Below, piece by piece: positions 792 to 50,723 of a stretch of 64,000 nucleotides of DNA (positions are counted from its first letter, which is position 1; the number at the start of each line of letters is the position of its first letter). The notes beneath the pieces are model-generated. The model saw only the letters and a list, made by a program, of their open reading frames with translations. It searched no databases and was not told where the DNA came from. A program made the translations under genes and the position numbers. The stretch spans positions 180,987-244,986 of IMG/VR virus record IMGVR_UViG_3300045256_000050; one strand, given 5' to 3'.

Positions 792-3150
792 GTCGGGTAA
801 GGGCGGAACATCGCTGCCCGCCCTCCCCTAAGAACCGTGCGTGTAAGTTTCCCTTCACACGGCTCAAGCAATCGGCTTAGCCACCAATCACGCCTTCTTC
901 CCGTGCTTTGCCAGATGGCAGTACAAGTGAAGAATGCGGAGGTTTGCGAGGCTGTCGTCCCCACCTTCCGAACGAGGCTTCACATGATGCTCATGTAACT
1001 CCTCGCCGTTGTTGAGGCTTTCGCCGCACTCAGGACACAAGAAGTTCTGTTGTTTGGCGACCTGACGCTTCTTGACAGTCAAGAGGTCGGACGCCTTTTC
1101 AGCGTCCCGCTCCTCCCAATACTGTTCAAGGGCGGGGTCGTCCCAGCAGGCGAACCGCTGGACAACAACGTGCCTCTTGATGAGAACCCAAGAAGGTTTC
1201 ATCATGTAGCATTCGGACGTGCCGAACACCCATTTTGCACCCTTCCGGTAGTTCCCCCAATACCGCTTCAGCCACCCCCAACTCTTGTTGGCGTGACGCC
1301 GCCTGACCCAACGGTATTGCAGTTGGACCAGATAGTTGTCGAGGCCGTCAAAAGTTCGGGACGCCACCGAGCATCGGAAGTAGTTGCACCACCCACGGAT
1401 GATCGGGTTCACTCTGGAGATCAGTTCTTCCAAAGGTCGCCCGTCATACTTGCGGAAGGTTTCCTTCAGCTTCTGCTTGATGGCCTTCACGGACTTCTTG
1501 CTGGGCTTGATGAAGAGCTTGTCGCCCTTCTTCGAGGTCAGCGTCTTGTACCTCCTGATGTTGAACCCAAGGAAGTCGAAACCTTCGTCCAGATGGGTGA
1601 TACGGGTCTTTTCCTCAGAGAGTTCCAGACCACGTTCCTTCAACCAGACAACTAGCTTCGCCCGAATTGCTTCGGCTTCCTCCTTGGAGTGACACAACAC
1701 CACGAAGTCGTCGGCGTACCTGACCAGCCCAACCGAGTTCGGAGCCAGTTCGTAGGTGGTCTTCCCGGTCCCCTTGCGGGTGTTTTTCCGGTACTTGACG
1801 CCCAGAACCTCCTCCATTCCGTGAAGAGCGATATTCGCCAACAAGGGACTAATCACTCCACCTTGCGGCGTACCCGCATGGGTGTCGTGGTAGCTGCCGT
1901 CGAATTCGACGTAACCCGCCTTCAGCCATTGCCGGATCAATTCCCTTGCGGGAAAATTCCCGATCAACTGCATCAGCTTGTCGTGGTCGATGTTGTCGAA
2001 GGCTCCCTTGATGTCAGCGTCCAGCACCCACAATTTCCCACCTTGGCTGGTGAGTTTGAAGATGCGAGCGATGGCATCTTGGCAAGAGCGTTTCGGTCGG
2101 AAACCGTAGGACGAGTCCTCGAACTTCGCTTCCCAGAACGGTTCCAGTGCGTTAAGCACCATCGCCTGAACAGCACGGTTCGTGATGTCAGGGATGCCCA
2201 AAGGACGGAGCTTGCCGTTGGCTTTCGGTATATAAATCCGTCGTGCGGGACACTTCTTGGCGAGTTGGTATTCAGCCAACTCGTCCACGAGGCGTCCCCT
2301 TGCTTCGGGGGTTTTGACAACGATCTTGTCCACCCCCGGCGTCGTCCTCCCTTTGTTCAACTGCGTCACCCGTCGAACCGCCAGACAGCGGTTCTCGTAG
2401 CTCCGCAGCATAACATGCTGAAGACTTCGCACCCTCTTGAGGTTTCCCTCTTTGGCGGCACGGAAAATCTCTTGGCGAAGGCGGCGTACAAAAGTGACGA
2501 CGTGGGACCAGTCAATGCTGTTCCAGTCGCACTTTTGCTGGGAACTTACGCTTTGCTTTTCGTTCTCCATTTATCCCTCCTTCCCTTGAAATCTTCCGTC
2601 CGATCACCTGTCGGAATTCAGCACCCTTTCGGGTCGGGCATTACCCTATCCAGCCGGTTATGGATTCCCGTTGCCTTTCGGCTGCTGGCATTCGCTTGAT
2701 CCGACATCCTTTACCTGCTGGGGAGTCCAGTGTTGCTCACGCTTCACTTGCTTTCGGGCCGAAACCTTCAAGACCCCAACAGGCTTAACACGTTCCGCAG
2801 AACCGAAGGTACGACTGCCGTAGGTAGTTCCTATACGCCGGGGATCGGAGGGGTGTTACTGGCCGTTGCCAGACGAAGACAGCCAGCCCTTCTGTGATCC
2901 CAGATAACCCGGCGTCAATTGCATTGCCGAGCCTACTCATCACGACGCTTCAAATGGAACTTCGCTTTCGCTTACCGTAGCAGTCTTTCCCCCGCCCCGG
3001 CTTTCTCCCGCAATTTGGGTACTCGCCGTTGGGCATTCTTGCTCCCAGCTTCACACGCCTCCGTTGCCAGAGACGCATGTGGGATGGGGAAAAGGTTTAA
3101 CACAAACCTTGGAGTTACCTCCACTTCAGTTCAGCGACCTCGTGTCGCAC
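792..3150 (-). mobile_element. Group II intron (IIB-like), 2359 nt, inserted in thg1
   Basis: 5' end GTGCG at 3150; domain V/VI GAGCCGTGTGAAGGGAAACTTACACGCACGGTTC...CCCTTACCCGAC with terminal AC at 792; encodes an RT ORF; removal restores an uninterrupted 279-aa Thg1 frame. Confidence 0.95.
888..2570 (-). CDS. Group II intron reverse transcriptase/maturase with C-terminal HNH endonuclease
   Basis: RPLGIP, SYGFRPKRS, DADIKGAFD, GTPQGGVISPLLANI, RYADD, FDFLGF, maturase X (NPIIRGWCNYF), CPECG...HEHHVKPRSEGGDDSLANLRILH. Confidence 0.97.
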   Translation of the reverse strand: MENEKQSVSSQQKCDWNSIDWSHVVTFVRRLRQEIFRAAKEGNLKRVRSLQHVMLRSYENRCLAVRRVTQLNKGRTTPGVDKIVVKTPEARGRLVDELAEYQLAKKCPARRIYIPKANGKLRPLGIPDITNRAVQAMVLNALEPFWEAKFEDSSYGFRPKRSCQDAIARIFKLTSQGGKLWVLDADIKGAFDNIDHDKLMQLIGNFPARELIRQWLKAGYVEFDGSYHDTHAGTPQGGVISPLLANIALHGMEEVLGVKYRKNTRKGTGKTTYELAPNSVGLVRYADDFVVLCHSKEEAEAIRAKLVVWLKERGLELSEEKTRITHLDEGFDFLGFNIRRYKTLTSKKGDKLFIKPSKKSVKAIKQKLKETFRKYDGRPLEELISRVNPIIRGWCNYFRCSVASRTFDGLDNYLVQLQYRWVRRRHANKSWGWLKRYWGNYRKGAKWVFGTSECYMMKPSWVLIKRHVVVQRFACWDDPALEQYWEERDAEKASDLLTVKKRQVAKQQNFLCPECGESLNNGEELHEHHVKPRSEGGDDSLANLRILHLYCHLAKHGKKA

Positions 3151-43991: not shown

Positions 43992-44001
43992 GGAGTTTAA
44001 C

Positions 44002-44196
44002 ATGAAGAAGGTATTGTTCGCTGCCCTGTTCCTCGTCGTCGGTTTCGTCGTCGGGGCACACGCCGGGAAGTGCCCGGTGATGAAGGGTCTGTGTCCGTTC
44101 GCTAAGGCCGCTTGTTGCGACAAGGCTGGCTGTTGCGTTGGGAATTGTAGCTGCGGCGACCAGTGCTGCTGCTGCGAAGCCTGCTGCAAGAAGTAA
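44002..44196 (+). CDS. Secreted Cys-rich (metallothionein-like) peptide
   Basis: 21-aa Sec signal ending AHA; 14 Cys in the 43-aa mature part; AAGGAG SD. Confidence 0.75.
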   Translation: MKKVLFAALFLVVGFVVGAHAGKCPVMKGLCPFAKAACCDKAGCCVGNCSCGDQCCCCEACCKK

Positions 44197-44238
44197 TAAC
44201 GCCTGACCTAGATAGTCTAGGTAACAAAAGGCGTTCAA

Positions 44239-44985
44239 ATGGATTACTACACAACATTGGGTGTGGCGAGAACCGCCACACCCGAAGAGATTCACAAAGC
44301 ATATCGCAAGCTCGCCATGAAGTACCACCCGGACCGCAATCCGGGTGATGACGAGGCCGTCGAAAAGTTCAAGGAAGTCGCCAACGCATACGAAGTCCTC
44401 GGGGACGACGTGAAGCGTTCGACCTACGACCGTCAGGGCTACTACGGGCGGCGTCCGCCCTCTCCCCCGCCCCCTCCCAAGAAAGACAACAAAAAGAAAG
44501 AACCTCCTCCGAAGACGCACGTCCACGTCAACCCGGATGAGATTCAGTGCAGCTACTTCGGGGGTACGACCACGGGGCGGAACGTGATGACGCACCTGTA
44601 TCTGACCAAAGAGCAGATGAAGATGGGCGGCAAGCACGAAGTCCACGTCAAGAAGCGGGAGATGTGTTCGAACTGCAACGGCGACGGGAACAGCAACCGT
44701 GTCTGTCAAATCTGCCGGGGTAGCGGTCGGCTCACGCACTTGGTCTACGGCGGGTTTCGGGAGATGGCTCCCGAGTGCCAGATGTGCAAGGGCGAGGGTA
44801 TCATCTACGTCCCATGCCGTCAGTGCAGGGGCGATGGGGTGAACCTCTGGGGCATTCGTTCTGTTACCGTATCCGTGCCGTCGAACTGTCAGAGCGGGCA
44901 ACAGATCACGGTCGCCGGAGAAGGGGAGCTTGCCCCGCTGAAGTCACCGGGCTACCTGAGAGTTGTTGTTTTAGAGAAGCCATGA
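44239..44985 (+). CDS. dnaJ: DnaJ-family co-chaperone (J domain + Zn finger)
   Basis: [21 protein letters not shown]; four CxxCxGxG repeats. Confidence 0.93.
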
Positions 44986-45015
44986 AAAAACAGTTCCGTA
45001 TTACTGTTATATCAC

Positions 45016-45486
45016 ATGGAAAACAAACGCTGCTCCAAGTGTGAAAAAACACTTGCACTGAATGACGAGAACTTCGTGCCGAGGAAGATCGGGAAGATTG
45101 GCTGGTATGCCGAGTGTCGAGCTTGTCGTAACAAGAACATGGCTCGTTACATGAAGAAGAAAAGACAACAAGAACCCGGCATTTGGGCTGAGTCCGACAG
45201 AAAAACCAAAGAGAAGCTTAAGGCCGAAGTGTTCGAGCATTACTGCCCGGACGGAATTAAGTGTGCCAAGTGCCCATTCACTGATCTCAGGGCTTTAACC
45301 ATAGATCACATCAACGGCGATGGTTACAAGCATACCTTCCCAAGTGGCAAGCGAATGACGGGGGCACCACTGTATCGATGGATTAAGAAGCACAACTACC
45401 CTAAAGACCTACAAGTGTTGTGCATGAACTGTCAGTGGATCAAGCGTCACGAAAACCAAGAACACAATCACAAACAGCGGACATAA
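45016..45486 (+). CDS. HNH-type homing endonuclease
   Basis: CSKC/CRAC N-terminal Zn site; LTIDHING...LQVLCMNC; lower GC than flanks. Confidence 0.8.
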   Translation: MENKRCSKCEKTLALNDENFVPRKIGKIGWYAECRACRNKNMARYMKKKRQQEPGIWAESDRKTKEKLKAEVFEHYCPDGIKCAKCPFTDLRALTIDHINGDGYKHTFPSGKRMTGAPLYRWIKKHNYPKDLQVLCMNCQWIKRHENQEHNHKQRT

Positions 45487-45490
45487 AAAA

Positions 45491-45520
45491 TCATAGCCGC
45501 ACCTTGCGGTACGGCTATGA
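45491..45520. terminator. Hairpin between convergent genes
   Basis: TCATAGCCG...CGGCTATGA stem with flanking A-run. Confidence 0.65.
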
Positions 45521-45599
45521 AATAGGTAACAGTGGTATCAGGCGTCTATGATACACCGCCACTTGGGGCGTCCGACCCCAGGTGATTTGGAAAAAGGGC

Positions 45600-45932
45600 T
45601 TAGAGAGCCAGACCCTTCTTGACGATAGCGTACTGGATCACGTCGCTGGACGTACCTGCGAAGGTGATCGTGGTGTCGTTTGCATTGAAGGTCAACACGG
45701 CCTTGACGGCTGCGGCAGCGGTCTTGTCGGTTGCGACTACGATGTAGTCACCAACAACGCCGGACAGAAGCGGAAGCTTGACGGTAGCAGCGCCACCCGA
45801 CAGCGTAACTTCATCAGCAACCATAACACGAGGACCGAGCAGGCGACCAACGCCAACCGTCCAGTGCTTCGAACCCATGTTCGAGCCTTCGACAGAACCC
45901 TGGCCTACGCCAGTTACAGAAGTAGCACCCAT
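45600..45932 (-). CDS. Small virion protein (head decoration-like)
   Basis: G/T/V/A-rich beta composition; AGGAGA SD. Confidence 0.55.
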   Translation of the reverse strand: MGATSVTGVGQGSVEGSNMGSKHWTVGVGRLLGPRVMVADEVTLSGGAATVKLPLLSGVVGDYIVVATDKTAAAAVKAVLTFNANDTTITFAGTSSDVIQYAIVKKGLAL

Positions 45933-46057
45933 TGTATTCTCCTATGTGGAAGTTGGGTTAAGTTTCACAATTCTCGCCTTGCTACAATTAGATACGCACC
46001 ACTTCTAATTCTGTTCTTGTCCTGGGATAATCCCTCGCTCCCTGGATAACTACCTCT

Positions 46058-46918
46058 ATGAGAGCTTTCCGGTTGATTTTCTTTCGCTGCTCCGTCACAA
46101 AACAATACTTCGTACACCTTTGTGAAGACAGGTCGAGCGGCGTTGAAGAAGTGAAGAGATTCTGTCCCACGCCGCTCGACGTGTTGGGCGACGTGTGCCC
46201 GGCCTCGTCGATGGACTACATGAAGATATGTGAGATTTGCGAGAGCCAGCACGGCTGGTTCTTACCCAACGACATAGCGACGGCCTGGGTGGACGGGCTG
46301 ATCTCAGGCGAGCGGACGCTGGACGAGATGTACAGCGGTGGGTCCAACCCGCACGTCAAGGGCATGACTAATGCGACGAGTCAGCAGTGGCAGATCATCA
46401 CGGGAAGCCTGATGGGAGCGGGATACATACAGGAGGTTGGTTCTGGTCACTGTTTCGGAATGACCGAGAGTAAGGACAAGGACTGGCTCGGGTATAAAGT
46501 AGCAGAGCTTTGTGAGTTGGGGAATCCGACGTTCTTCGAGGACGGCGGGAGATTCCGCTGGCGGACCAGGGTGGACGCAATCTCGTTCGACCTGTTCCGG
46601 CAGAACCACTATACGAAGCGTCAAAAAACCATCAGGCCGGTCGTACTTGAGCAAATCATGGACACCGGCTTGATGGTGTGGTACATGGACAAGGGGTTCT
46701 GGCGAACCCCAACGACCATCGCATTTCGCACCAGCTATCTCGACGACAAGGGCAACCGTGCCATCGTGAACTTCCTGAACTCCGTTGACATCAACGCCGA
46801 GTTCAAGAAGTACGAGCGGTCCAAGCAGATTGTGTTAGACAAAGAGGGGACGGAGACGTTCCTGGCGACCATCTCCGGGCGGGTGCCGCACTTCATGGAG
46901 TACCGGCTAGAGTCTTAG
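46058..46918 (+). CDS. LAGLIDADG-fold protein lacking both catalytic acids, N-terminal Cys domain
   Basis: ITGSLMGAG and LMVWYMDKG replace GxLLGDG and LAIWFMDDG; TAACTA 5 nt before ATG. Confidence 0.75.
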   Translation: MRAFRLIFFRCSVTKQYFVHLCEDRSSGVEEVKRFCPTPLDVLGDVCPASSMDYMKICEICESQHGWFLPNDIATAWVDGLISGERTLDEMYSGGSNPHVKGMTNATSQQWQIITGSLMGAGYIQEVGSGHCFGMTESKDKDWLGYKVAELCELGNPTFFEDGGRFRWRTRVDAISFDLFRQNHYTKRQKTIRPVVLEQIMDTGLMVWYMDKGFWRTPTTIAFRTSYLDDKGNRAIVNFLNSVDINAEFKKYERSKQIVLDKEGTETFLATISGRVPHFMEYRLES

Positions 46919-47435
46919 CACAGTAGTCGTACATGGCGATGCTGGAAGCACAGCCTACGTTCAGTGAACGCACGCTGCCGTACTGACGGATGTAAAGAAT
47001 CCGCTCGCACAAGTTCCGCAACTCCGGCACGAGGCCGATGTCCTCCTGGCCGAACACCATGACGACGTGCTTGTCCTTCGGCCACTGGAAAGTCTCCACC
47101 GGCACGGCGTCGTCGCCGGTGTCGAAGCCGACGACGCAGCAGTCCTTCAGGTCGAGTTCTTCAGTGAACTTCACGAACTTCAGGTTCTCGTACAGGTGCG
47201 TGCCGACGGTGCCCCGCCGGTCGAACTGCTTGCGGCCGTAGACGATCACTTCCTTCGCCAAGAAGGCGTTGGCGTTGCGGATGACCGTGCCGATGTTGAA
47301 GTCCTTGAACTGGTTGGAGATCAGGACGCTGAAGTTGTGACGCTTCGTGTCCAGGTTGCCCTTGATCGCCTCCGTCGTCCAATACTTGTAGACATCAATC
47401 ACATTCCGGTGATCGGTCGTTTCGAACTTTGTCAT
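46893..47435 (-). CDS. SpoU/TrmH-family RNA 2'-O-methyltransferase
   Basis: NIGTVIRNANAF, VFGQEDIGL, SLNVGCASSIAMY. Confidence 0.9.
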   Translation of the reverse strand: MTKFETTDHRNVIDVYKYWTTEAIKGNLDTKRHNFSVLISNQFKDFNIGTVIRNANAFLAKEVIVYGRKQFDRRGTVGTHLYENLKFVKFTEELDLKDCCVVGFDTGDDAVPVETFQWPKDKHVVMVFGQEDIGLVPELRNLCERILYIRQYGSVRSLNVGCASSIAMYDYCAKTLAGTP

Positions 47436-47607
47436 AGACCCAGACTTCCCGGTTGGTGGCCGAGTGCCGCTGGAGTTTCCAGCCCAAACACTTCAACTGC
47501 ACCCGATCCTCGATGCTGATCCTTTTACTTGCTTTGACGATCCAGTAAAGGTCGTATTCTTCTGCCTCGGCTTGGTGGCCGAGCATTCTGTACCCAGGGG
47601 GTAACAT
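47395..47607 (-). CDS. Hypothetical protein
   Basis: Short ORF upstream of the SpoU gene. Confidence 0.45.
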   Translation of the reverse strand: MLPPGYRMLGHQAEAEEYDLYWIVKASKRISIEDRVQLKCLGWKLQRHSATNREVWVYDKVRNDRSPECD

Positions 47608-47680
47608 AGAGCCTCACTTTGCTCCAAAATCATAGCACAAGAGCGATATAACTTCAACTCTTATAGATGAAAGGAAACAC

Positions 47681-48052
47681 ATGGCAGTACCAGTCCATCA
47701 CCACCTAATCGTTCGGGCAGAAGTGAAGAAACCCCTGTCCGATGTTGAGCTTACGAAAACTTGGCTGGACGAATTAGTTACGAAAATCGGGATGAAAAAG
47801 GTCAGCGGCCCGCACGCCGCCTACGTCGAGAAGGAAGGAAACAAGGGCGTCACGGGCTGCGTGATTATTGAAACCAGCCACATCGCCCTGCACGTCTGGG
47901 ACGAAACTAACCCGGCCCTCGTCCAACTCGATGTGTACACCTGCTCGTGCCTGCCGCTCGAAGCGGTCTTCGAACACCTGGACGTGATGCAACCTCGGAA
48001 GATCGAGTACAAGTTCCTCGACCGGGAACACGGCCTCAAGTTTGTAAAATGA
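47681..48052 (+). CDS. speD: S-adenosylmethionine decarboxylase proenzyme family
   Basis: GVTG..IIETSHIALHVW (pyruvoyl cleavage site), QLDVYTC. Confidence 0.9.
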   Translation: MAVPVHHHLIVRAEVKKPLSDVELTKTWLDELVTKIGMKKVSGPHAAYVEKEGNKGVTGCVIIETSHIALHVWDETNPALVQLDVYTCSCLPLEAVFEHLDVMQPRKIEYKFLDREHGLKFVK

Positions 48053-48759
48053 TCCACGTCCTCGTCACGTTGTTCAACACCGGCCACGTTTTCGGTCGGT
48101 GCTACGCCTCCCTGACAGCCCAGAAGTCCAAGTTCAAATGCTACGTCGTTGACGACTGCTCCACCGACGACTCGGCACAGGTCGCCGAGTCGTTGACCTG
48201 TTTCGACACCCGGTTCATCGTCATCCGCAACCAGAAGAAGTTGTACCAGTCCGGCTGTTACGACTTCCTGATGAACGAGATGGAAATCCGGGACGAGGAC
48301 GTGTGCGTGGCCGTCGATTCCGACGACTACCTGCTTGGGACCGATGTGTTTGACTTAGTGAAGGAACAGTACGACCGGGGGTGTGTACTCACCCACGGCA
48401 CCTTCGTTCGCACGAGTGGCGGGATCGCCACGCAGCTAGTTCCGCCCTACGACCTGACCCGACTCCGGCGTTACCCTGACGTGCCGTCACACCTGCGGAC
48501 CTGGAAGGCGTGGTTGTGGCGGAAGATGCCCGCCGACGTACTGAAAGCACCCAACGGCTACTACTGGCGTGCGGCGGGCGACTTGGCGTTCATGTACACG
48601 ATGATGGAGATGTCGGGAGGCAGGATCGGATTCATCTCGAAGCCAGTCTACTGTTACGACGACACGTTGCCGACCTGCAACCACAACAGGAACCCAGGCA
48701 TTCAGAAACACAACGACCACATCATCCGCAGTCGGTGTTCCTTGCCCAAGTTATACTAA
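48049..48759 (+). CDS. GT2-family glycosyltransferase
   Basis: VVDDCSTD, VDSDDYL, AAGDLA. Confidence 0.88.
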   Translation: MIHVLVTLFNTGHVFGRCYASLTAQKSKFKCYVVDDCSTDDSAQVAESLTCFDTRFIVIRNQKKLYQSGCYDFLMNEMEIRDEDVCVAVDSDDYLLGTDVFDLVKEQYDRGCVLTHGTFVRTSGGIATQLVPPYDLTRLRRYPDVPSHLRTWKAWLWRKMPADVLKAPNGYYWRAAGDLAFMYTMMEMSGGRIGFISKPVYCYDDTLPTCNHNRNPGIQKHNDHIIRSRCSLPKLY

Positions 48760-49707
48760 ACCACAGATCGGGGCGGACACGTTGGAGAACCAGTCGAATG
48801 CTTCGTCGGGCTTCGGGTTGGCCCACGCCCGGTAGCGGTTGTAAGCGAGGTTGCTCGGTTCGGCGTAGCTTTTCTCCAGTCCCTTGAGAATCCAGGGCAG
48901 GAGCATGAGGCCGGGCTTATTGAACACGTCGGCCAGGATGCCAATGCCGCTGGGGAAGTAGAACCCGTAGTCGATGTCCTGCATGCAGTACAGGGCGGTG
49001 CTGAGCTTTTCGCCGATCACCTTACGGCACGGTGCCCGTTGTTCCATCACGTTCGCCACCGCTTCCGTTTTGTCCCGGTCGTACTCCGCACCGAGGAACA
49101 TGAAGCTGCCTTTGCCTAAGAACCCGTAGACCTTCGTCAAGAAATCGATCCACTGCTGCTCTGACCACAGACTCCATCCGCCCGCTTTCTGTCTGTCCTT
49201 GTCCCGGTTGGAGATGTAGACGGCGATAATCGGCTTGGGCAGGTTTGCCATTAGTTTCGATCTGGCGTCGGCGTCCACGCCGGTGAACTTCAGCCCGTAG
49301 TGATAGCTGATCGGGAATGGCTTGAGCCAGTCGGCGAGGGGTCGGCCGGATTCAAGGTGTACGTTGGCTGAGAGGTTCTGGACCCACGGCTTGTCAACGA
49401 ACCCGAGTCCGCCGATGGTCATGGGCCAATCGGCGGGGAGGCACTGGCTGATGACCTGCCATGCGTTCCGGTCCTCCATGTACCCGCCCCAATGGACGTT
49501 GGGGAGCATCTTAACGAACTCGCCGCCCCGGTTCATTTCGCCCCGTGAGGCGACCGAGACGATGATCTCTTTGCCCAGCTTCTCTTTGAAGTGCATCAGT
49601 TTGGTGTAGACCCAACTGATGTCCCCGATGCCGCACGGGAGGCAGTAGTGACAGCACTTCTCGGGTCCGCCGAAGTCGGCGGGGGTGTAGATTTTGTCTT
49701 CGCTCAT
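48751..49707 (-). CDS. GT9-like (GT-B) glycosyltransferase
   Basis: CGIGDISW, FLGAEYD, FPSGIGILAD. Confidence 0.6.
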   Translation of the reverse strand: MSEDKIYTPADFGGPEKCCHYCLPCGIGDISWVYTKLMHFKEKLGKEIIVSVASRGEMNRGGEFVKMLPNVHWGGYMEDRNAWQVISQCLPADWPMTIGGLGFVDKPWVQNLSANVHLESGRPLADWLKPFPISYHYGLKFTGVDADARSKLMANLPKPIIAVYISNRDKDRQKAGGWSLWSEQQWIDFLTKVYGFLGKGSFMFLGAEYDRDKTEAVANVMEQRAPCRKVIGEKLSTALYCMQDIDYGFYFPSGIGILADVFNKPGLMLLPWILKGLEKSYAEPSNLAYNRYRAWANPKPDEAFDWFSNVSAPICGLV

Positions 49708-50723
49708 TACTTCAGGAACGGGGTTAGATCGAACTTCTTCACGACGGACTCTGGGCTGCTGCTGAACAGGTCGGCGAAGAACTTGGTTTCGATGTTCTCT
49801 TTTTTGCACCATGTATAGGTCATCGGCTTGAGGTAATCGTAATACAACATCACTTGCGGTACATCCAGGTTGTCGGCGATGATGTTCAGGCCGGACTGGT
49901 AGCCGATGAAGAGGCTGCTGTTGTTGATGATGTGACAGACCTTAGCCGGAGCCTCGTTCATGTAGGAAACCGTCTCGATCCGACGCTGGGCGAGTCCCAG
50001 GGACACTTCCTCAATCGCCTCTTTGTCGAATTTCGCTCCGATGACGACGATGGGCAGGTCCGGGTTGTACTTCGAGTAGAGCAGGTCAACGTACTCAAGC
50101 CACTGGTCGATGCTCCAACACGGCAGGTTGCGGTTCTTGGCACTCCCAGAGACGTACAAGGTCATGTAGTTCTCGAACGGCACCTTGATGGGTTCCATCT
50201 TAAGCGGCACGTCGGTCATGACCGTCAGGTCGTCGATCTCGTCCAGGCGGGTGCCGTCTTCGAGCCATTTGTTGACGGCGTAGGGCACGGAATCCAGGTT
50301 GTACGACCCCTGCCAGTTTTTGATAGTAGCGGACAGGTCGTACTTGGTCGCCGCCATTTCGTTGTACAAGTTGCCCTTCACTAAGCGAAGTTTCACTTCG
50401 CCGACCTGCGGCAGCAGTGACATCCAGGGCAGGGAGCGGTTCTGAACGTGGTCGAGGACGACCACGCAAATGTTCAGGTTGATGGTCTTAAAGTGCGGGG
50501 CAACCTTCTGGTAGACCCAGAAGATGTCGCCGAGTCCTTGCACCACGTCGAGGGTGATGTAGTCCTTCGGCGGCGGCGGTGTTGTTTTAACCCGCTTCGG
50601 CGTTACTTTTTGCTGTCTCACAGCGACCGGCTTGCGACTTACCACTTTTCGCCCCATTTGTTGTTCCTTAAGTTTTGCAACACGTCTGTGAAACAAATCT
50701 TGCCTGACCTGATTGTTGCTCAT
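49707..50723 (-). CDS. GT9-like (GT-B) glycosyltransferase, paralogue of the adjacent gene
   Basis: QGLGDIFW, VIGAKFD, FIGYQSGLNIIAD. Confidence 0.62.
   Translation of the reverse strand: MSNNQVRQDLFHRRVAKLKEQQMGRKVVSRKPVAVRQQKVTPKRVKTTPPPPKDYITLDVVQGLGDIFWVYQKVAPHFKTINLNICVVVLDHVQNRSLPWMSLLPQVGEVKLRLVKGNLYNEMAATKYDLSATIKNWQGSYNLDSVPYAVNKWLEDGTRLDEIDDLTVMTDVPLKMEPIKVPFENYMTLYVSGSAKNRNLPCWSIDQWLEYVDLLYSKYNPDLPIVVIGAKFDKEAIEEVSLGLAQRRIETVSYMNEAPAKVCHIINNSSLFIGYQSGLNIIADNLDVPQVMLYYDYLKPMTYTWCKKENIETKFFADLFSSSPESVVKKFDLTPFLK

What the first reader, a model, noticed from the sequence alone, without database searches (positions are those of the whole stretch)
46047..46918. Catalytically dead LAGLIDADG with an N-terminal Cys domain under a late-type promoter
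Seen: both motif position-8 acids are replaced (GSLMGAG, D to A; WYMDKG, D to K) while the ORF is intact, with an added ~70-aa Cys-containing N-terminus and TAACTA 5 nt before the ATG. Known: WhiA is a LAGLIDADG domesticated as a transcription factor, and some act as intron maturases. Inference: a repurposed DNA- or RNA-binding regulator or splicing factor.
Basis: partly seen in the sequence, partly recalled or inferred. Interest (0 to 1): 0.6.

Follow-up and report, generated by a model that had tools for sequence, protein, structure and literature searches.

The report
Nuclease-dead LAGLIDADG protein family in huge phages
This gene of a huge hot-spring phage encodes a protein built from two homing-endonuclease folds that have both lost their cutting residues. 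It belongs to a large, apparently undescribed phage family that sits back-to-back with a small tail-fibre-like gene, so it most likely works as a site-specific DNA-binding protein, not a nuclease.

Summary
ORF 46058-46918 (+, 286 aa) is an I-SceI-like LAGLIDADG_2 protein in which both metal-binding position-8 acids are replaced (A121, K212). The gene is intact and under strong purifying selection (dN/dS 0.03-0.11 in the LAGLIDADG part).

- The "Cys domain" (aa 1-94) is a degenerate GIY-YIG-superfamily (MUG113/T5orf172) domain that has also lost its catalytic Tyr, Arg and Glu.
- The protein belongs to one well-supported clade of at least 118 cluster representatives, none with two acids. A clade of 72 canonical D/D enzymes and one acid-less protein lies on the other side of the split.
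- Members of this clade sit divergently next to a conserved ~110-aa gene (MGATSVTG... leader, tail-fibre-tip-like beta-sandwich) in 60 of 73 scorable phage loci. This includes members that still carry intact-looking GIY-YIG or MUG113 heads.

TAACTA is real, but it is not a genome-wide or "late" motif. It is part of a clade-specific pair of direct repeats (GGGATAA / GGATAAC) where relatives have -35/-10-like elements, with no Shine-Dalgarno. That fits a short-leader or leaderless mRNA.

Best reading: a domesticated, non-cutting DNA-binding protein acting at its own divergent promoter region. The target and function are inferred, not shown.

The parts
46058..46918 (+). Whole ORF, 286 aa (P0001): degenerate GIY-YIG-like head, linker, acid-less I-SceI-like LAGLIDADG body.
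46058..46339 (+). N-terminal domain, aa 1-94 (beta-beta-alpha-beta-alpha-alpha). It is MUG113/T5orf172-like, of the GIY-YIG superfamily. The catalytic positions are replaced: Tyr to F8, Arg to G28, Glu to G66. C11, C36 and C61 are invariant.
   Evidence: Homologues' N-domains hit Pfam MUG113/T5orf172 above the cut-off. hhalign gives 88% probability, E 3e-6. All structural hits to aa 1-102 are GIY-YIG proteins: Slx1 Z 5.1, HIGLE 5.0, I-TevI 4.2. Alignment.
46340..46366 (+). Low-confidence linker, aa 95-103.
   Evidence: pLDDT below 50 at 95-97 and 99-103.
46367..46915 (+). LAGLIDADG_2 (I-SceI-like) domain, aa 104-286.
   Evidence: Pfam 52 bits. I-WcaI Z 21.6; I-SceI Foldseek E 3e-11.
46397..46423 (+). 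LAGLIDADG motif 1, ITGSLMGAG (aa 114-122). Position 8 is A121 (codon 46418-46420) in place of the catalytic Asp.
46670..46696 (+). LAGLIDADG motif 2, LMVWYMDKG (aa 205-213). Position 8 is K212 in place of the catalytic Asp. The position-7 Asp (D211) is kept, as it is across the family.
46021..46050 (+). Two direct repeats, CCTGGGATAA (46021-46030) and CCTGGATAAC (46041-46050), 19-20 nt apart. They are conserved in all 5 orthologous loci while the spacer varies. This is a candidate operator or promoter of the gene. There is no Shine-Dalgarno before the ATG.
   Evidence: Alignment. The motif is rare in the genome. Family-wide layout.
45968..45994 (.). Most conserved intergenic block, CAATTCTCGCCTTGCTACAATTAGATA. 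It contains TGCTACAAT (extended -10-like) and TAGATA. A TAG[ACG]TA element recurs at this position in distant loci. It is a promoter-like element whose strand is unassigned.
   Evidence: The consensus sigma-70 scan found nothing here.
45600..45932 (-). Conserved partner gene, 110 aa. It has the leader MGATSVTGVGQGSVEG (disordered in the model), a beta-sandwich at aa 35-105 that weakly resembles tail-fibre and tailspike distal (lectin-like) domains, and a strong Shine-Dalgarno. It is transcribed divergently from the LAGLIDADG gene.
   Evidence: Synonymous constraint on codons 1-30.

Best explanation
The gene encodes a non-catalytic, sequence-specific DNA-binding protein descended from a two-module homing endonuclease: a GIY-YIG-type cutting head on an I-SceI-like LAGLIDADG body.

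In the whole clade the LAGLIDADG body has lost both metal-binding acids, so it can only serve as a DNA-recognition module. In the window's lineage the head has lost its catalytic Tyr, Arg and Glu as well.

The protein is kept by selection at one fixed place, back-to-back with a small tail-fibre-like gene. I infer that it binds an element about 20 bp long in the 125-bp divergent promoter region. Here that element would be the GGGATAA / GGATAAC repeat pair lying over its own -35/-10 positions. From there it would set its own expression and perhaps that of the partner gene, much as I-TevI represses its own promoter and as immunity repressors work with their operators.

Shown: the fold, the loss of catalytic residues in both modules, purifying selection, a single clade, the conserved gene pair, and conserved type-specific cis elements.

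Inferred: DNA binding, the binding site, and the regulatory outcome.
For: - **Catalytic residues are absent.** A121 and K212 align to the catalytic Asp pair of I-WcaI. Of the 191 tree rows, 118 have no acid at either site and one has an acid at only one. A branch with 100% SH-aLRT support separates 118 proteins lacking the acid pair (117 with none, one with a single acid) from a clade of 72 D/D enzymes plus one acid-less protein.
- **Selection.** dN/dS is 0.03-0.11 over near-saturated dS.
- **Basic character is kept.** The acid-less clade has median pI 9.3 and net charge +7, against 9.4 and +11 in the D/D enzymes. A conserved strand carries alternating Arg (RFRWRTR, aa 165-171).
- **The pairing is conserved.** 53 of 75 IMG/VR loci that hold the small gene carry the LAGLIDADG gene divergently upstream, mostly directly adjacent. 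That is 60 of 73 scorable loci, needing only 5 changes on the small-gene tree. The same holds in L017, L019 and L021.
- **Types are discontinuous.** Within the window's clade the LAGLIDADG part is 86-91% identical, like SpoU at 90%. Against L017 and L023 it falls to 27-31%, while DnaJ, SpoU and the small gene stay at 50-75%. This is the pattern of specificity or immunity modules.
- **Cis elements follow the protein type.** The repeat pair is conserved in the 5 orthologous loci. A block of about 22 bp, T[TC]GGAAAAAATATTGCGAAA-like, spans the -35 and the spacer in the GA/GS subclade. A divergent orientation is typical of regulator-target pairs.
- **A precedent exists.** Homing endonucleases can act as repressors: I-TevI (PMC10448857, PMC3384342). 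WhiA is a LAGLIDADG-derived regulator (PMC3384342).
Against: - No binding data exist.
- The window protein's own LAGLIDADG domain is nearly neutral (pI 7.7, net +1).
- The -35/-10 reading and the 'operator' were recognised after looking at the sequences. The consensus scan found no sigma-70 promoter here.
- Thirteen of 73 loci do without the gene.
- The same facts (fixed position beside a conserved gene, type replacement, nuclease-headed members at the same locus) also fit a selfish homing-element history with no regulatory role.
- In WhiA the LAGLIDADG domain may not be the DNA-binding part at all (PMC3384342).
Confidence: 0.45

Rival explanations
1. It is a remnant or component of a selfish homing element with no host-like function. 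The family would be a free-standing GIY-YIG/MUG113 plus LAGLIDADG homing endonuclease whose target lies in or beside the very conserved 5' end of the small gene. Headless and dead-headed copies, such as this one, would persist because binding the target protects the genome from cutting by nuclease-bearing relatives in co-infections (anti-homing immunity), or simply by linkage.
For: - Members with an intact-looking canonical GIY-YIG head (P0066, 49 bits) or a full MUG113 head (P0083, P0047, P0006) belong to the same acid-less clade. P0066 sits divergent from the small gene (L098, sequence verified).
- The locus is a hot spot for mobile genes: an HNH gene is inserted at 45016-45486 and is absent from relatives, and L002 has a TnpB.
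- The LAGLIDADG and small-gene distance matrices agree poorly (Spearman 0.19; L023 is 74% against 24% identical).
- 13 of 73 loci lack the gene.
- Codons 1-30 of the small gene are constrained at synonymous sites (21/258 against 271/640 differing pairs), as expected for a protein target site.
- Homing-endonuclease genes cluster beside essential or structural genes in phages (PMC10448857).
Against: - dN/dS of 0.03-0.11 over saturated dS, including the dead head at 0.10-0.28, argues for a maintained function, not a decaying selfish gene.
- Most clade members (about 180 aa) have no nuclease module at all, yet are conserved.
- Presence or absence needs only 5 changes on the small-gene tree.
- An anti-homing role is a real function and overlaps the best explanation, since both rest on DNA binding at the locus.
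Confidence: 0.28
2. It is an RNA-binding protein, either a maturase-like splicing factor or a translational regulator that binds the 5' part of the small gene's mRNA or its own leaderless mRNA.
For: - Some LAGLIDADG proteins are maturases (bI3 maturase, 2ab5, is among the fold hits).
- Synonymous constraint on the first 90 nt of the small gene could reflect an RNA element.
- The gene has no Shine-Dalgarno.
Against: - The gene is free-standing.
- No group I intron was found in the 245 kb held, which is about half the genome.
- The only intron found, a group II intron at 792-3111, carries its own RT, maturase and HNH ORF.
- No conserved RNA structure was tested or seen.
Confidence: 0.08
3. It is a partner, chaperone or assembly factor of the small tail-fibre-like protein, with the LAGLIDADG fold reused for protein-protein contacts.
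For: - The gene pair is conserved.
- Tail-fibre genes often have adjacent assembly factors.
- WhiA's LAGLIDADG domain may act through protein contacts (PMC3384342).
Against: - The divergent orientation with separate promoters is unusual for chaperones.
- The family keeps a basic charge like the DNA-cutting relatives.
- The complex prediction gave no answer either way.
Confidence: 0.08
4. It is still a nuclease or nickase with a non-canonical active site, for example one using D211, K212 or the N-terminal domain.
For: - D211 (position 7) is nearly invariant.
- Lys is the commonest residue at position 8 of motif 2 in one half of the clade.
Against: - Position 8 of motif 2 varies freely across the clade (K, S, C, A, G, R, N, T, V), and motif 1 never has an acid.
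- D211 is also conserved in D/D enzymes, so it is probably structural.
- The head lacks the GIY-YIG Tyr, Arg and Glu.
Confidence: 0.05

Closest known systems
I-SceI / I-WcaI (monomeric LAGLIDADG_2 homing endonucleases)
   Same: Same Pfam family (PF03161, 52 bits) and same fold (Z 21.6, rmsd 3.0 A over 187 residues). Both LAGLIDADG helices are present, the position-7 Asp of motif 2 is kept, and the charge is basic across the clade.
   Different: - Both position-8 metal-binding Asp are replaced (A121, K212) in this protein, and both acids are missing across its side of the split (117 proteins with no acid, one with a single acid).
- It is not intron- or intein-encoded.
- It has an N-terminal GIY-YIG-like domain.
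- It is fixed beside a partner gene.
WhiA / DUF199 (bacterial LAGLIDADG-derived transcription factor)
   Same: A LAGLIDADG scaffold without the catalytic acids, maintained by selection. WhiA regulates its own gene (PMC3384342). WhiA is the next-best structural class (8dy9_I Z 12.5, 3hyi Z 12.0).
   Different: [quoted passage not shown]
- No WhiA Pfam models hit.
- It is much closer to I-SceI than to WhiA.
- It is phage-encoded.
- It arose as a separate loss of the acids inside LAGLIDADG_2.
I-TevI and T5orf172 homing endonucleases (GIY-YIG head plus separate DNA-binding module; I-TevI doubles as autorepressor)
   Same: Modular layout with a GIY-YIG-superfamily head at one end and a DNA-recognition module at the other. 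It is a free-standing phage gene beside a conserved gene, and there is a possible operator over its own promoter (PMC10448857).
   Different: - The DNA-recognition module here is an acid-less LAGLIDADG, not a helix-turn-helix or zinc finger.
- In this lineage the head lacks Tyr, Arg and Glu, so no cleavage is expected.
Engineered MegaTev-type fusions (I-TevI nuclease domain on a LAGLIDADG scaffold). Recalled from my own knowledge, not checked here.
   Same: Relatives P0066 (GIY-YIG plus acid-less LAGLIDADG) and P0083, P0047 and P0006 (MUG113 with a full residue set) have this architecture naturally.
   Different: - The relatives are natural proteins, and their LAGLIDADG part is inactive.
- The window protein has lost the head's catalytic residues too.
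LAGLIDADG maturases (e.g. bI3, I-AniI)
   Same: A LAGLIDADG fold with reduced or absent nuclease activity (2ab5 is among the fold hits).
   Different: The gene is not inside an intron, and no group I intron was found in the 245 kb held.

Membership tests
LAGLIDADG_2 (PF03161), I-SceI-like fold | Profile match above the curated cut-off, covering both motifs | tested here: met
   52.1 bits against a cut-off of 25, aa 111-268 on profile positions 1-168 of 168.
LAGLIDADG_2 (PF03161), I-SceI-like fold | [quoted passage not shown] | tested here: met
   Model pLDDT 92.6. I-WcaI Z 21.6 with rmsd 3.0 A over 187 residues; I-SceI Foldseek E 3e-11.
Active LAGLIDADG homing endonuclease | Acidic residue (D or E) at position 8 of each LAGLIDADG motif to bind the catalytic metals | tested here: not met
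   A121 and K212 are invariant in the 5 close homologues. The protein's 118-row side of the split holds no protein with both acids: 117 have none and one has a single acid.
Active LAGLIDADG homing endonuclease | Encoded in an intron or intein, or patchily distributed as a mobile free-standing gene | tested here: inconclusive
   The gene is free-standing with no intron or intein. It is present in 60 of 73 loci with 5 changes on the tree, but its phylogeny is incongruent with the neighbouring gene.
WhiA / DUF199 | [quoted passage not shown] | tested here: not met
   The ORF ends at aa 286 with the last LAGLIDADG helix. No helix-turn-helix or WhiA Pfam hit.
WhiA / DUF199 | LAGLIDADG scaffold lacking the catalytic acids | tested here: met
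   WhiA structures match at Z 12.0-12.5.
GIY-YIG superfamily (MUG113 PF13455 / T5orf172 PF10544), N-terminal domain | Profile match of the domain itself | tested here: not met
   P0001:1-110 gives no Pfam hit even at E 10. Homology rests on relatives: P0006 scores 39 bits, P0009 33 bits and P0047 55 bits to MUG113. hhalign gives 88% probability, E 3e-6.
GIY-YIG superfamily (MUG113 PF13455 / T5orf172 PF10544), N-terminal domain | beta-beta-alpha-beta-alpha core fold | tested here: met
   The model's secondary-structure order fits. All six structural hits covering aa 1-102 are GIY-YIG proteins, but the scores are weak (Z 4.2-5.1).
GIY-YIG superfamily (MUG113 PF13455 / T5orf172 PF10544), N-terminal domain | Catalytic Tyr (GIY), Arg and Glu | tested here: not met
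   F8, G28 and G66 stand at the aligned positions and are invariant or nearly so in the 5 homologues. P0047, P0083 and P0006 keep all three residues.
Group I intron maturase | Encoded within, and acting on, a group I intron | tested here: not met
   No group I intron was found in any of the 245 kb held. About half of the genome is missing (CheckV 48%).
   Only C11, C36 and C61 are invariant.
Transcription regulator acting at its own divergent promoter | Specific binding to the intergenic DNA and an effect on transcription | not testable with these tools
   Only indirect evidence: conserved repeats and blocks, the conserved divergent pair and type discontinuity.

The most novel reading that the evidence does not exclude
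Huge phages carry an old, widespread module in which an I-SceI-like LAGLIDADG scaffold with no active site serves as an exchangeable DNA-recognition unit at one locus.

- With a live GIY-YIG or MUG113 head, it would be a natural 'MegaTev'-type homing nuclease aimed at the conserved 5' end or promoter of a receptor-binding-protein-like gene.
- Without a head, or with a dead head as here, it would be a type-specific repressor or protector.

The module would then work like an immunity system: it would control a tail-fibre-tip gene and shield the locus from the nuclease-bearing alleles of competing phages.
Probability: 0.2. Interest if true: 0.78.

Novelty: new variant of a known kind. Interest (0 to 1): 0.62.

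Why it matters
Domestication of a LAGLIDADG endonuclease into a non-cutting protein is so far known mainly from WhiA and from organellar maturases. This locus shows a second, independent case inside the I-SceI family.

- **Scale.** It is phage-borne, old and large: at least 118 clusters at 50% identity.
- **Mis-annotation.** Databases currently label these proteins "homing endonuclease" (PHROG 11023).
- **Natural intermediates.** The clade holds the whole series: a live GIY-YIG or MUG113 head on a dead LAGLIDADG body, a dead head on a dead body, and a body alone. This makes the path from selfish nuclease to DNA-binding protein directly testable.
- **Possible tools.** It offers natural, compact (about 180 aa), monomeric, long-site DNA-binding scaffolds that do not cut.
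- **A partner worth naming.** The fixed pairing with a tail-fibre-like gene also flags an unknown but widespread virion-gene module of huge phages.

Tried and rejected
- **Phage GenBank search.** A DNA search with 44000-50000 found nothing. The protein search found one distant hit in an unannotated 595-kb phage.
- **First locus scan.** The search for related loci with the LAGLIDADG alignment found no relatives in viral contigs. The partner gene worked as a handle instead.
- **PDB sequence search.** phmmer of the single protein against the PDB found nothing. The 5-sequence profile was needed. Weak Fpg-glycosylase matches (E about 1) were dismissed as chance.
- **NCBIfam.** No family for this protein or 7 relatives. 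The cluster look-up gave no names.
- **Late-promoter idea.** TAACTA, GGGATAA and GGATAAC are rare and not promoter-associated in the 245 kb held. The consensus promoter scan found nothing in 45500-47600.
- **Maturase idea.** No group I intron was found.
- **Complex prediction.** The LAGLIDADG domain with the small protein scored ipSAE 0.06 and 0.00, which is no answer and counts neither for nor against binding.
- **Sequencing runs.** The source is a hot-spring or microbial-mat metagenome. One wastewater metatranscriptome holds contigs of a 90-97% relative over parts of the gene and the intergenic region. Contigs cannot show starts or prove transcription.
- **Small-protein fold.** Fold searches gave only weak tail-fibre or lectin-like matches (best E 1.6e-3). 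The Atlas returned only unnamed viral clusters.
- **Literature.** Five searches found no description of this family.
Full report
**Setting.** The window is the last 64 kb of a 245-kb IMG/VR virus record that CheckV estimates to be 48% complete, so it comes from a huge phage of roughly 0.5 Mb. GC content is 55-60%. Runs that hold the sequence come from hot-spring and microbial-mat metagenomes. The neighbours of the finding are typical huge-phage cargo:
- a DnaJ gene (44239-44985);
- an HNH endonuclease gene (45016-45486);
- a 110-aa gene on the minus strand (45600-45932);
- the ORF in question (46058-46918, +);
- a convergent SpoU methylase gene that overlaps its last 26 nt (46893-47435, -);
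- an AdoMet decarboxylase gene (47681-48052).

**Check of the observation.** The ORF is 286 aa, and its ATG is the first start codon after the upstream in-frame stop.
- Pfam LAGLIDADG_2 matches aa 111-268 at 52 bits against a cut-off of 25.
- A profile of the ORF and its four close homologues aligns to I-WcaI (6x1j). GSLMGAGYI pairs with GNILGDVYI, and WYMDKG with WFMDDGG. A121 and K212 therefore stand where the two metal-binding Asp of I-SceI-type enzymes stand.
- An AlphaFold2 model built on 99 sequences has mean pLDDT 92.6. Its residues 104-286 superpose on I-WcaI (VIA Z 21.6, rmsd 3.0 A over 187 residues) and on I-SceI (Foldseek E 3e-11). WhiA follows at Z 12.5.

Only the length of the N-terminal extension needs adjusting: it is about 100 aa, not about 70.

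**The gene is functional, not decaying.** Four homologues of 77-86% identity exist on separate metagenome contigs.
- Both substitutions, the start codon and the reading frame are kept. Indels are whole codons.
- Nei-Gojobori dN/dS is 0.03-0.11 for aa 101-286 and 0.10-0.28 for aa 1-100, with dS from 0.6 to saturation.
- The neighbouring genes give 0.03-0.27.
- Because dS is near saturation the ratios are rough, but pN is far below pS in every pair.

**The N-terminal "Cys domain".** The model shows a compact beta-beta-alpha-beta-alpha-alpha domain (aa 1-94) joined by a low-confidence linker (95-103).
- P0001's own N-terminus hits no Pfam model.
- The N-termini of more distant full-length relatives hit MUG113 and T5orf172 above the curated cut-offs. 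Both are GIY-YIG-clan families. Scores: P0006 39 bits, P0009 33, P0041 30, P0047 55, P0083 41.
- A profile-profile comparison of the window clade's N-domain with those domains gives 88% probability, E 3e-6.
- Every structural match that covers aa 1-102 is a GIY-YIG protein: Slx1 Z 5.1, HIGLE 5.0, I-TevI 4.2, EF2693 and PD-T4-3. The Z values are modest.
- In the alignment, the window clade has F8, G28 and G66 at the positions of the GIY Tyr, the Arg and the Glu of GEWF. P0047, P0083 and P0006 keep all three residues. T5orf172 nuclease activity depends on such a Glu (PMC10448857).
- Only C11, C36 and C61 are invariant. Whether they bind a metal could not be tested.

The protein is therefore built from two nuclease folds, and both lack their catalytic residues.

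**A large clade, one loss.** An exhaustive profile search of 1.84 billion cluster representatives gave 227 hits.
- The nearest 60 or so lack acids at both position-8 sites, apart from a handful of D/D proteins and P0059 (G/D). Motif 1 has N, G, A, S, T, K or R. Motif 2 has K, S, C, A, G, R or N. Most canonical D/D proteins appear further away.
- A maximum-likelihood tree of 191 domains puts 72 D/D proteins plus one acid-less exception on one side of a branch with 100% SH-aLRT support. The other side holds 118 proteins lacking the acid pair (117 with no acid at either site, one with a single acid).
- The acid-less side keeps a basic character like the enzymes: median pI 9.3 and net charge +7, against 9.4 and +11. 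The window protein's own domain is close to neutral.
- Most acid-less members are about 180 aa, that is the LAGLIDADG body alone.
- Some carry MUG113 heads, and P0066 carries a canonical GIY-YIG head (49 bits).
- D/D proteins with N-terminal extensions carry helix-turn-helix or Ros/MucR domains instead.

**A conserved gene pair.**
- In all five close loci the gene lies divergently beside the 110-aa gene, with a gap of about 120-130 bp. Downstream genes differ: SpoU, TnpB or IMPDH.
- The same arrangement holds for distant relatives on 652-kb, 217-kb and 17-kb contigs. Their small proteins are homologous at 37-61% identity and share the leader MGATSVTGVGQGS.EG.
- Using the small protein as a handle, 75 IMG/VR loci were fetched. 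Of these, 53 carry a LAGLIDADG homologue divergently upstream, mostly directly adjacent, and none of those has an acid at position 8.
- Counting only scorable loci, 60 of 73 have it, and presence or absence needs 5 changes on the small-protein tree.
- The headed member P0066 (GIY-YIG) is also divergent from a gene that starts MTATSVTGIGQGSSDG. P0083 (MUG113) is divergent from a 114-aa gene that could not be read because no DNA was available.
- The small protein's model has a disordered leader and a beta-sandwich at aa 35-105. The sandwich weakly resembles distal domains of tail fibres and tailspikes and H-type lectins (best E 1.6e-3).
- A PHROG tail-fibre family matches at E 1.6e-5.
- One relative, L068, has five tandem paralogues with the same leader.

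The partner is thus probably a virion (fibre-tip-like) protein, but this is a weak inference.

**Type discontinuity.** Within the window's clade the LAGLIDADG part is 86-91% identical, like SpoU at 90% and above DnaJ at 74-77%. Against L017 and L023 it falls to 27-31%, while DnaJ, SpoU and the small protein stay at 50-75%. Distance matrices of the two partners correlate only weakly (Spearman 0.19; 15 of 2000 permutations reach that value). The protein is therefore strongly conserved within a type and replaced between types. Specificity modules such as immunity repressors behave this way, and so do horizontally exchanged homing genes.

**The intergenic region and the "late promoter".**
- In the five orthologous loci the conserved islands are a block at 45968-45994 (containing TGCTACAAT and TAGATA) and two direct repeats. 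The repeats are CCTGGGATAA (46021-30) and CCTGGATAAC (46041-50), 19-20 nt apart, with a variable spacer. TAACTA is the tail of the second repeat.
- GGGATAA occurs 14 times and TGGATAAC 3 times in the 245 kb held. Neither is a general upstream motif.
- Across 44 distinct loci, only 9 have a Shine-Dalgarno-like sequence before the LAGLIDADG start, against 40 before the small gene.
- Nineteen loci have a TAnA[TC]A or TAnAAT hexamer ending 3-8 nt before the ATG, against 3.0 +/- 1.6 in shuffles. That pattern was defined after inspecting the sequences.
- In AT-rich relatives this hexamer is preceded, 16-18 nt upstream, by TTGGAA, TTGGTA or TCGGAA. Some of these loci have a Shine-Dalgarno leader (for example L060: TTGGAA, 18 nt, TATAAT).
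- In one protein subclade a block of about 22 bp that covers the -35 and the spacer is the best-conserved part of the region.

I read this as a sigma-70-like promoter that often gives a leaderless or very short-leader mRNA, overlapped by a longer conserved element that could be an operator. Nothing indicates late timing. The consensus scanner found no promoter in the window's own GC-rich version.

**Other tests.**
- Rfam found no group I intron in the 245 kb. It found one group II intron (792-3111, -) with its own RT, maturase and HNH ORF. A maturase role is therefore unlikely.
- A complex prediction of the LAGLIDADG domain with the small protein gave no answer.
- Contigs from an RNA library of a related phage cover parts of the gene, but they prove nothing about transcription.
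- Among the five close loci the first 30 codons of the small gene are far more conserved at synonymous sites than the rest: 21/258 against 271/640 differing pairs. The pairs are not independent. This points to a nucleotide-level constraint, such as a protein or RNA target, at 45843-45932.

**Interpretation.**
- Firmly supported: this is a non-cutting descendant of a LAGLIDADG endonuclease, maintained by selection. It belongs to an old phage clade that lost the active site once and is tied to one locus.
- Most likely (about 0.45): it is a site-specific DNA-binding protein acting on the divergent promoter region or the adjacent 5' end of the partner gene, as an autoregulator and perhaps a regulator of the partner.
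- Main rival (about 0.28): the whole clade is the DNA-targeting part of a homing element aimed at this locus, and dead copies persist as protectors or passengers.

The two readings overlap, because both rest on binding at the locus. Binding and cleavage assays on the locus DNA, including the headed relatives, would separate them.

**Novelty.** Five literature searches found no description of this family. PHROGs labels it a homing endonuclease. It is a new variant of a known kind, namely domesticated LAGLIDADG proteins, for which WhiA is the precedent (PMC3384342).

Noticed in passing
window 792-3111 (-): A group II intron. Rfam Intron_gpII matches at 792-867 (55 bits) and group-II-D1D4-7 at 3033-3111 (40.6 bits). 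A 560-aa ORF (888-2570, -) carries RVT_N, RVT_1, GIIM and HNH domains. The interrupted host gene was not identified.
   Followed up: partly
window 45016-45486 (+): An HNH endonuclease-like ORF (156 aa; phrog_2255 E 1e-12) lies between DnaJ and the small gene. It is absent from the orthologous loci L003, L005 and L017 and has no tblastn match in 12 related loci. It is probably a recently inserted free-standing homing-endonuclease gene, which marks this region as a hot spot for mobile genes.
   Followed up: partly
window 45843-45932 (-), first 30 codons of the small gene: Synonymous sites are strikingly conserved among the five close loci: 21/258 differing pairs, against 271/640 in codons 31-110. 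The encoded leader, MGATSVTGVGQGS.EG, is the most conserved part of the protein family and is disordered in the model. The cause is unknown: a DNA target, an RNA element or an effect on translation.
   Followed up: partly
L068:236-3336 (+): Five tandem genes of 111-238 aa all start with the same MG/MAAT..G.G.G leader as the small protein, and they have different C-terminal parts. This looks like a set of interchangeable virion or fibre-tip proteins that share one N-terminal adaptor. The 245 kb held of the window's genome contain only one such gene.
   Followed up: partly
L002:1729-3042 (+): In the closest relative (86% identical LAGLIDADG protein), a TnpB/OrfB_IS605 gene occupies the place where the window has the SpoU methylase gene.
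   Followed up: no
window 46893-46918: The 3' ends of the LAGLIDADG gene and of the convergent SpoU methylase gene overlap by 26 nt. The same overlap occurs in L004 and L005. A relative in a bioreactor metagenome has a 264-nt insertion at this junction.
   Followed up: no
L098:202-1077 (+) (P0066); also P0083 and P0047: These are natural fusions of an intact-looking GIY-YIG or MUG113 nuclease head to an acid-less LAGLIDADG body. They are candidates for a new chimeric class of homing endonuclease.
   Followed up: partly
contig positions of L019, L034, L043, L046, L048, L078: In 6 of 25 contigs longer than 100 kb, the small-gene and LAGLIDADG locus lies within about 7 kb of a contig end. That is more than the roughly 2 expected. 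This may reflect assembly breaks at a hypervariable region or proximity to a genome end. The count was made by eye, not tested.
   Followed up: no
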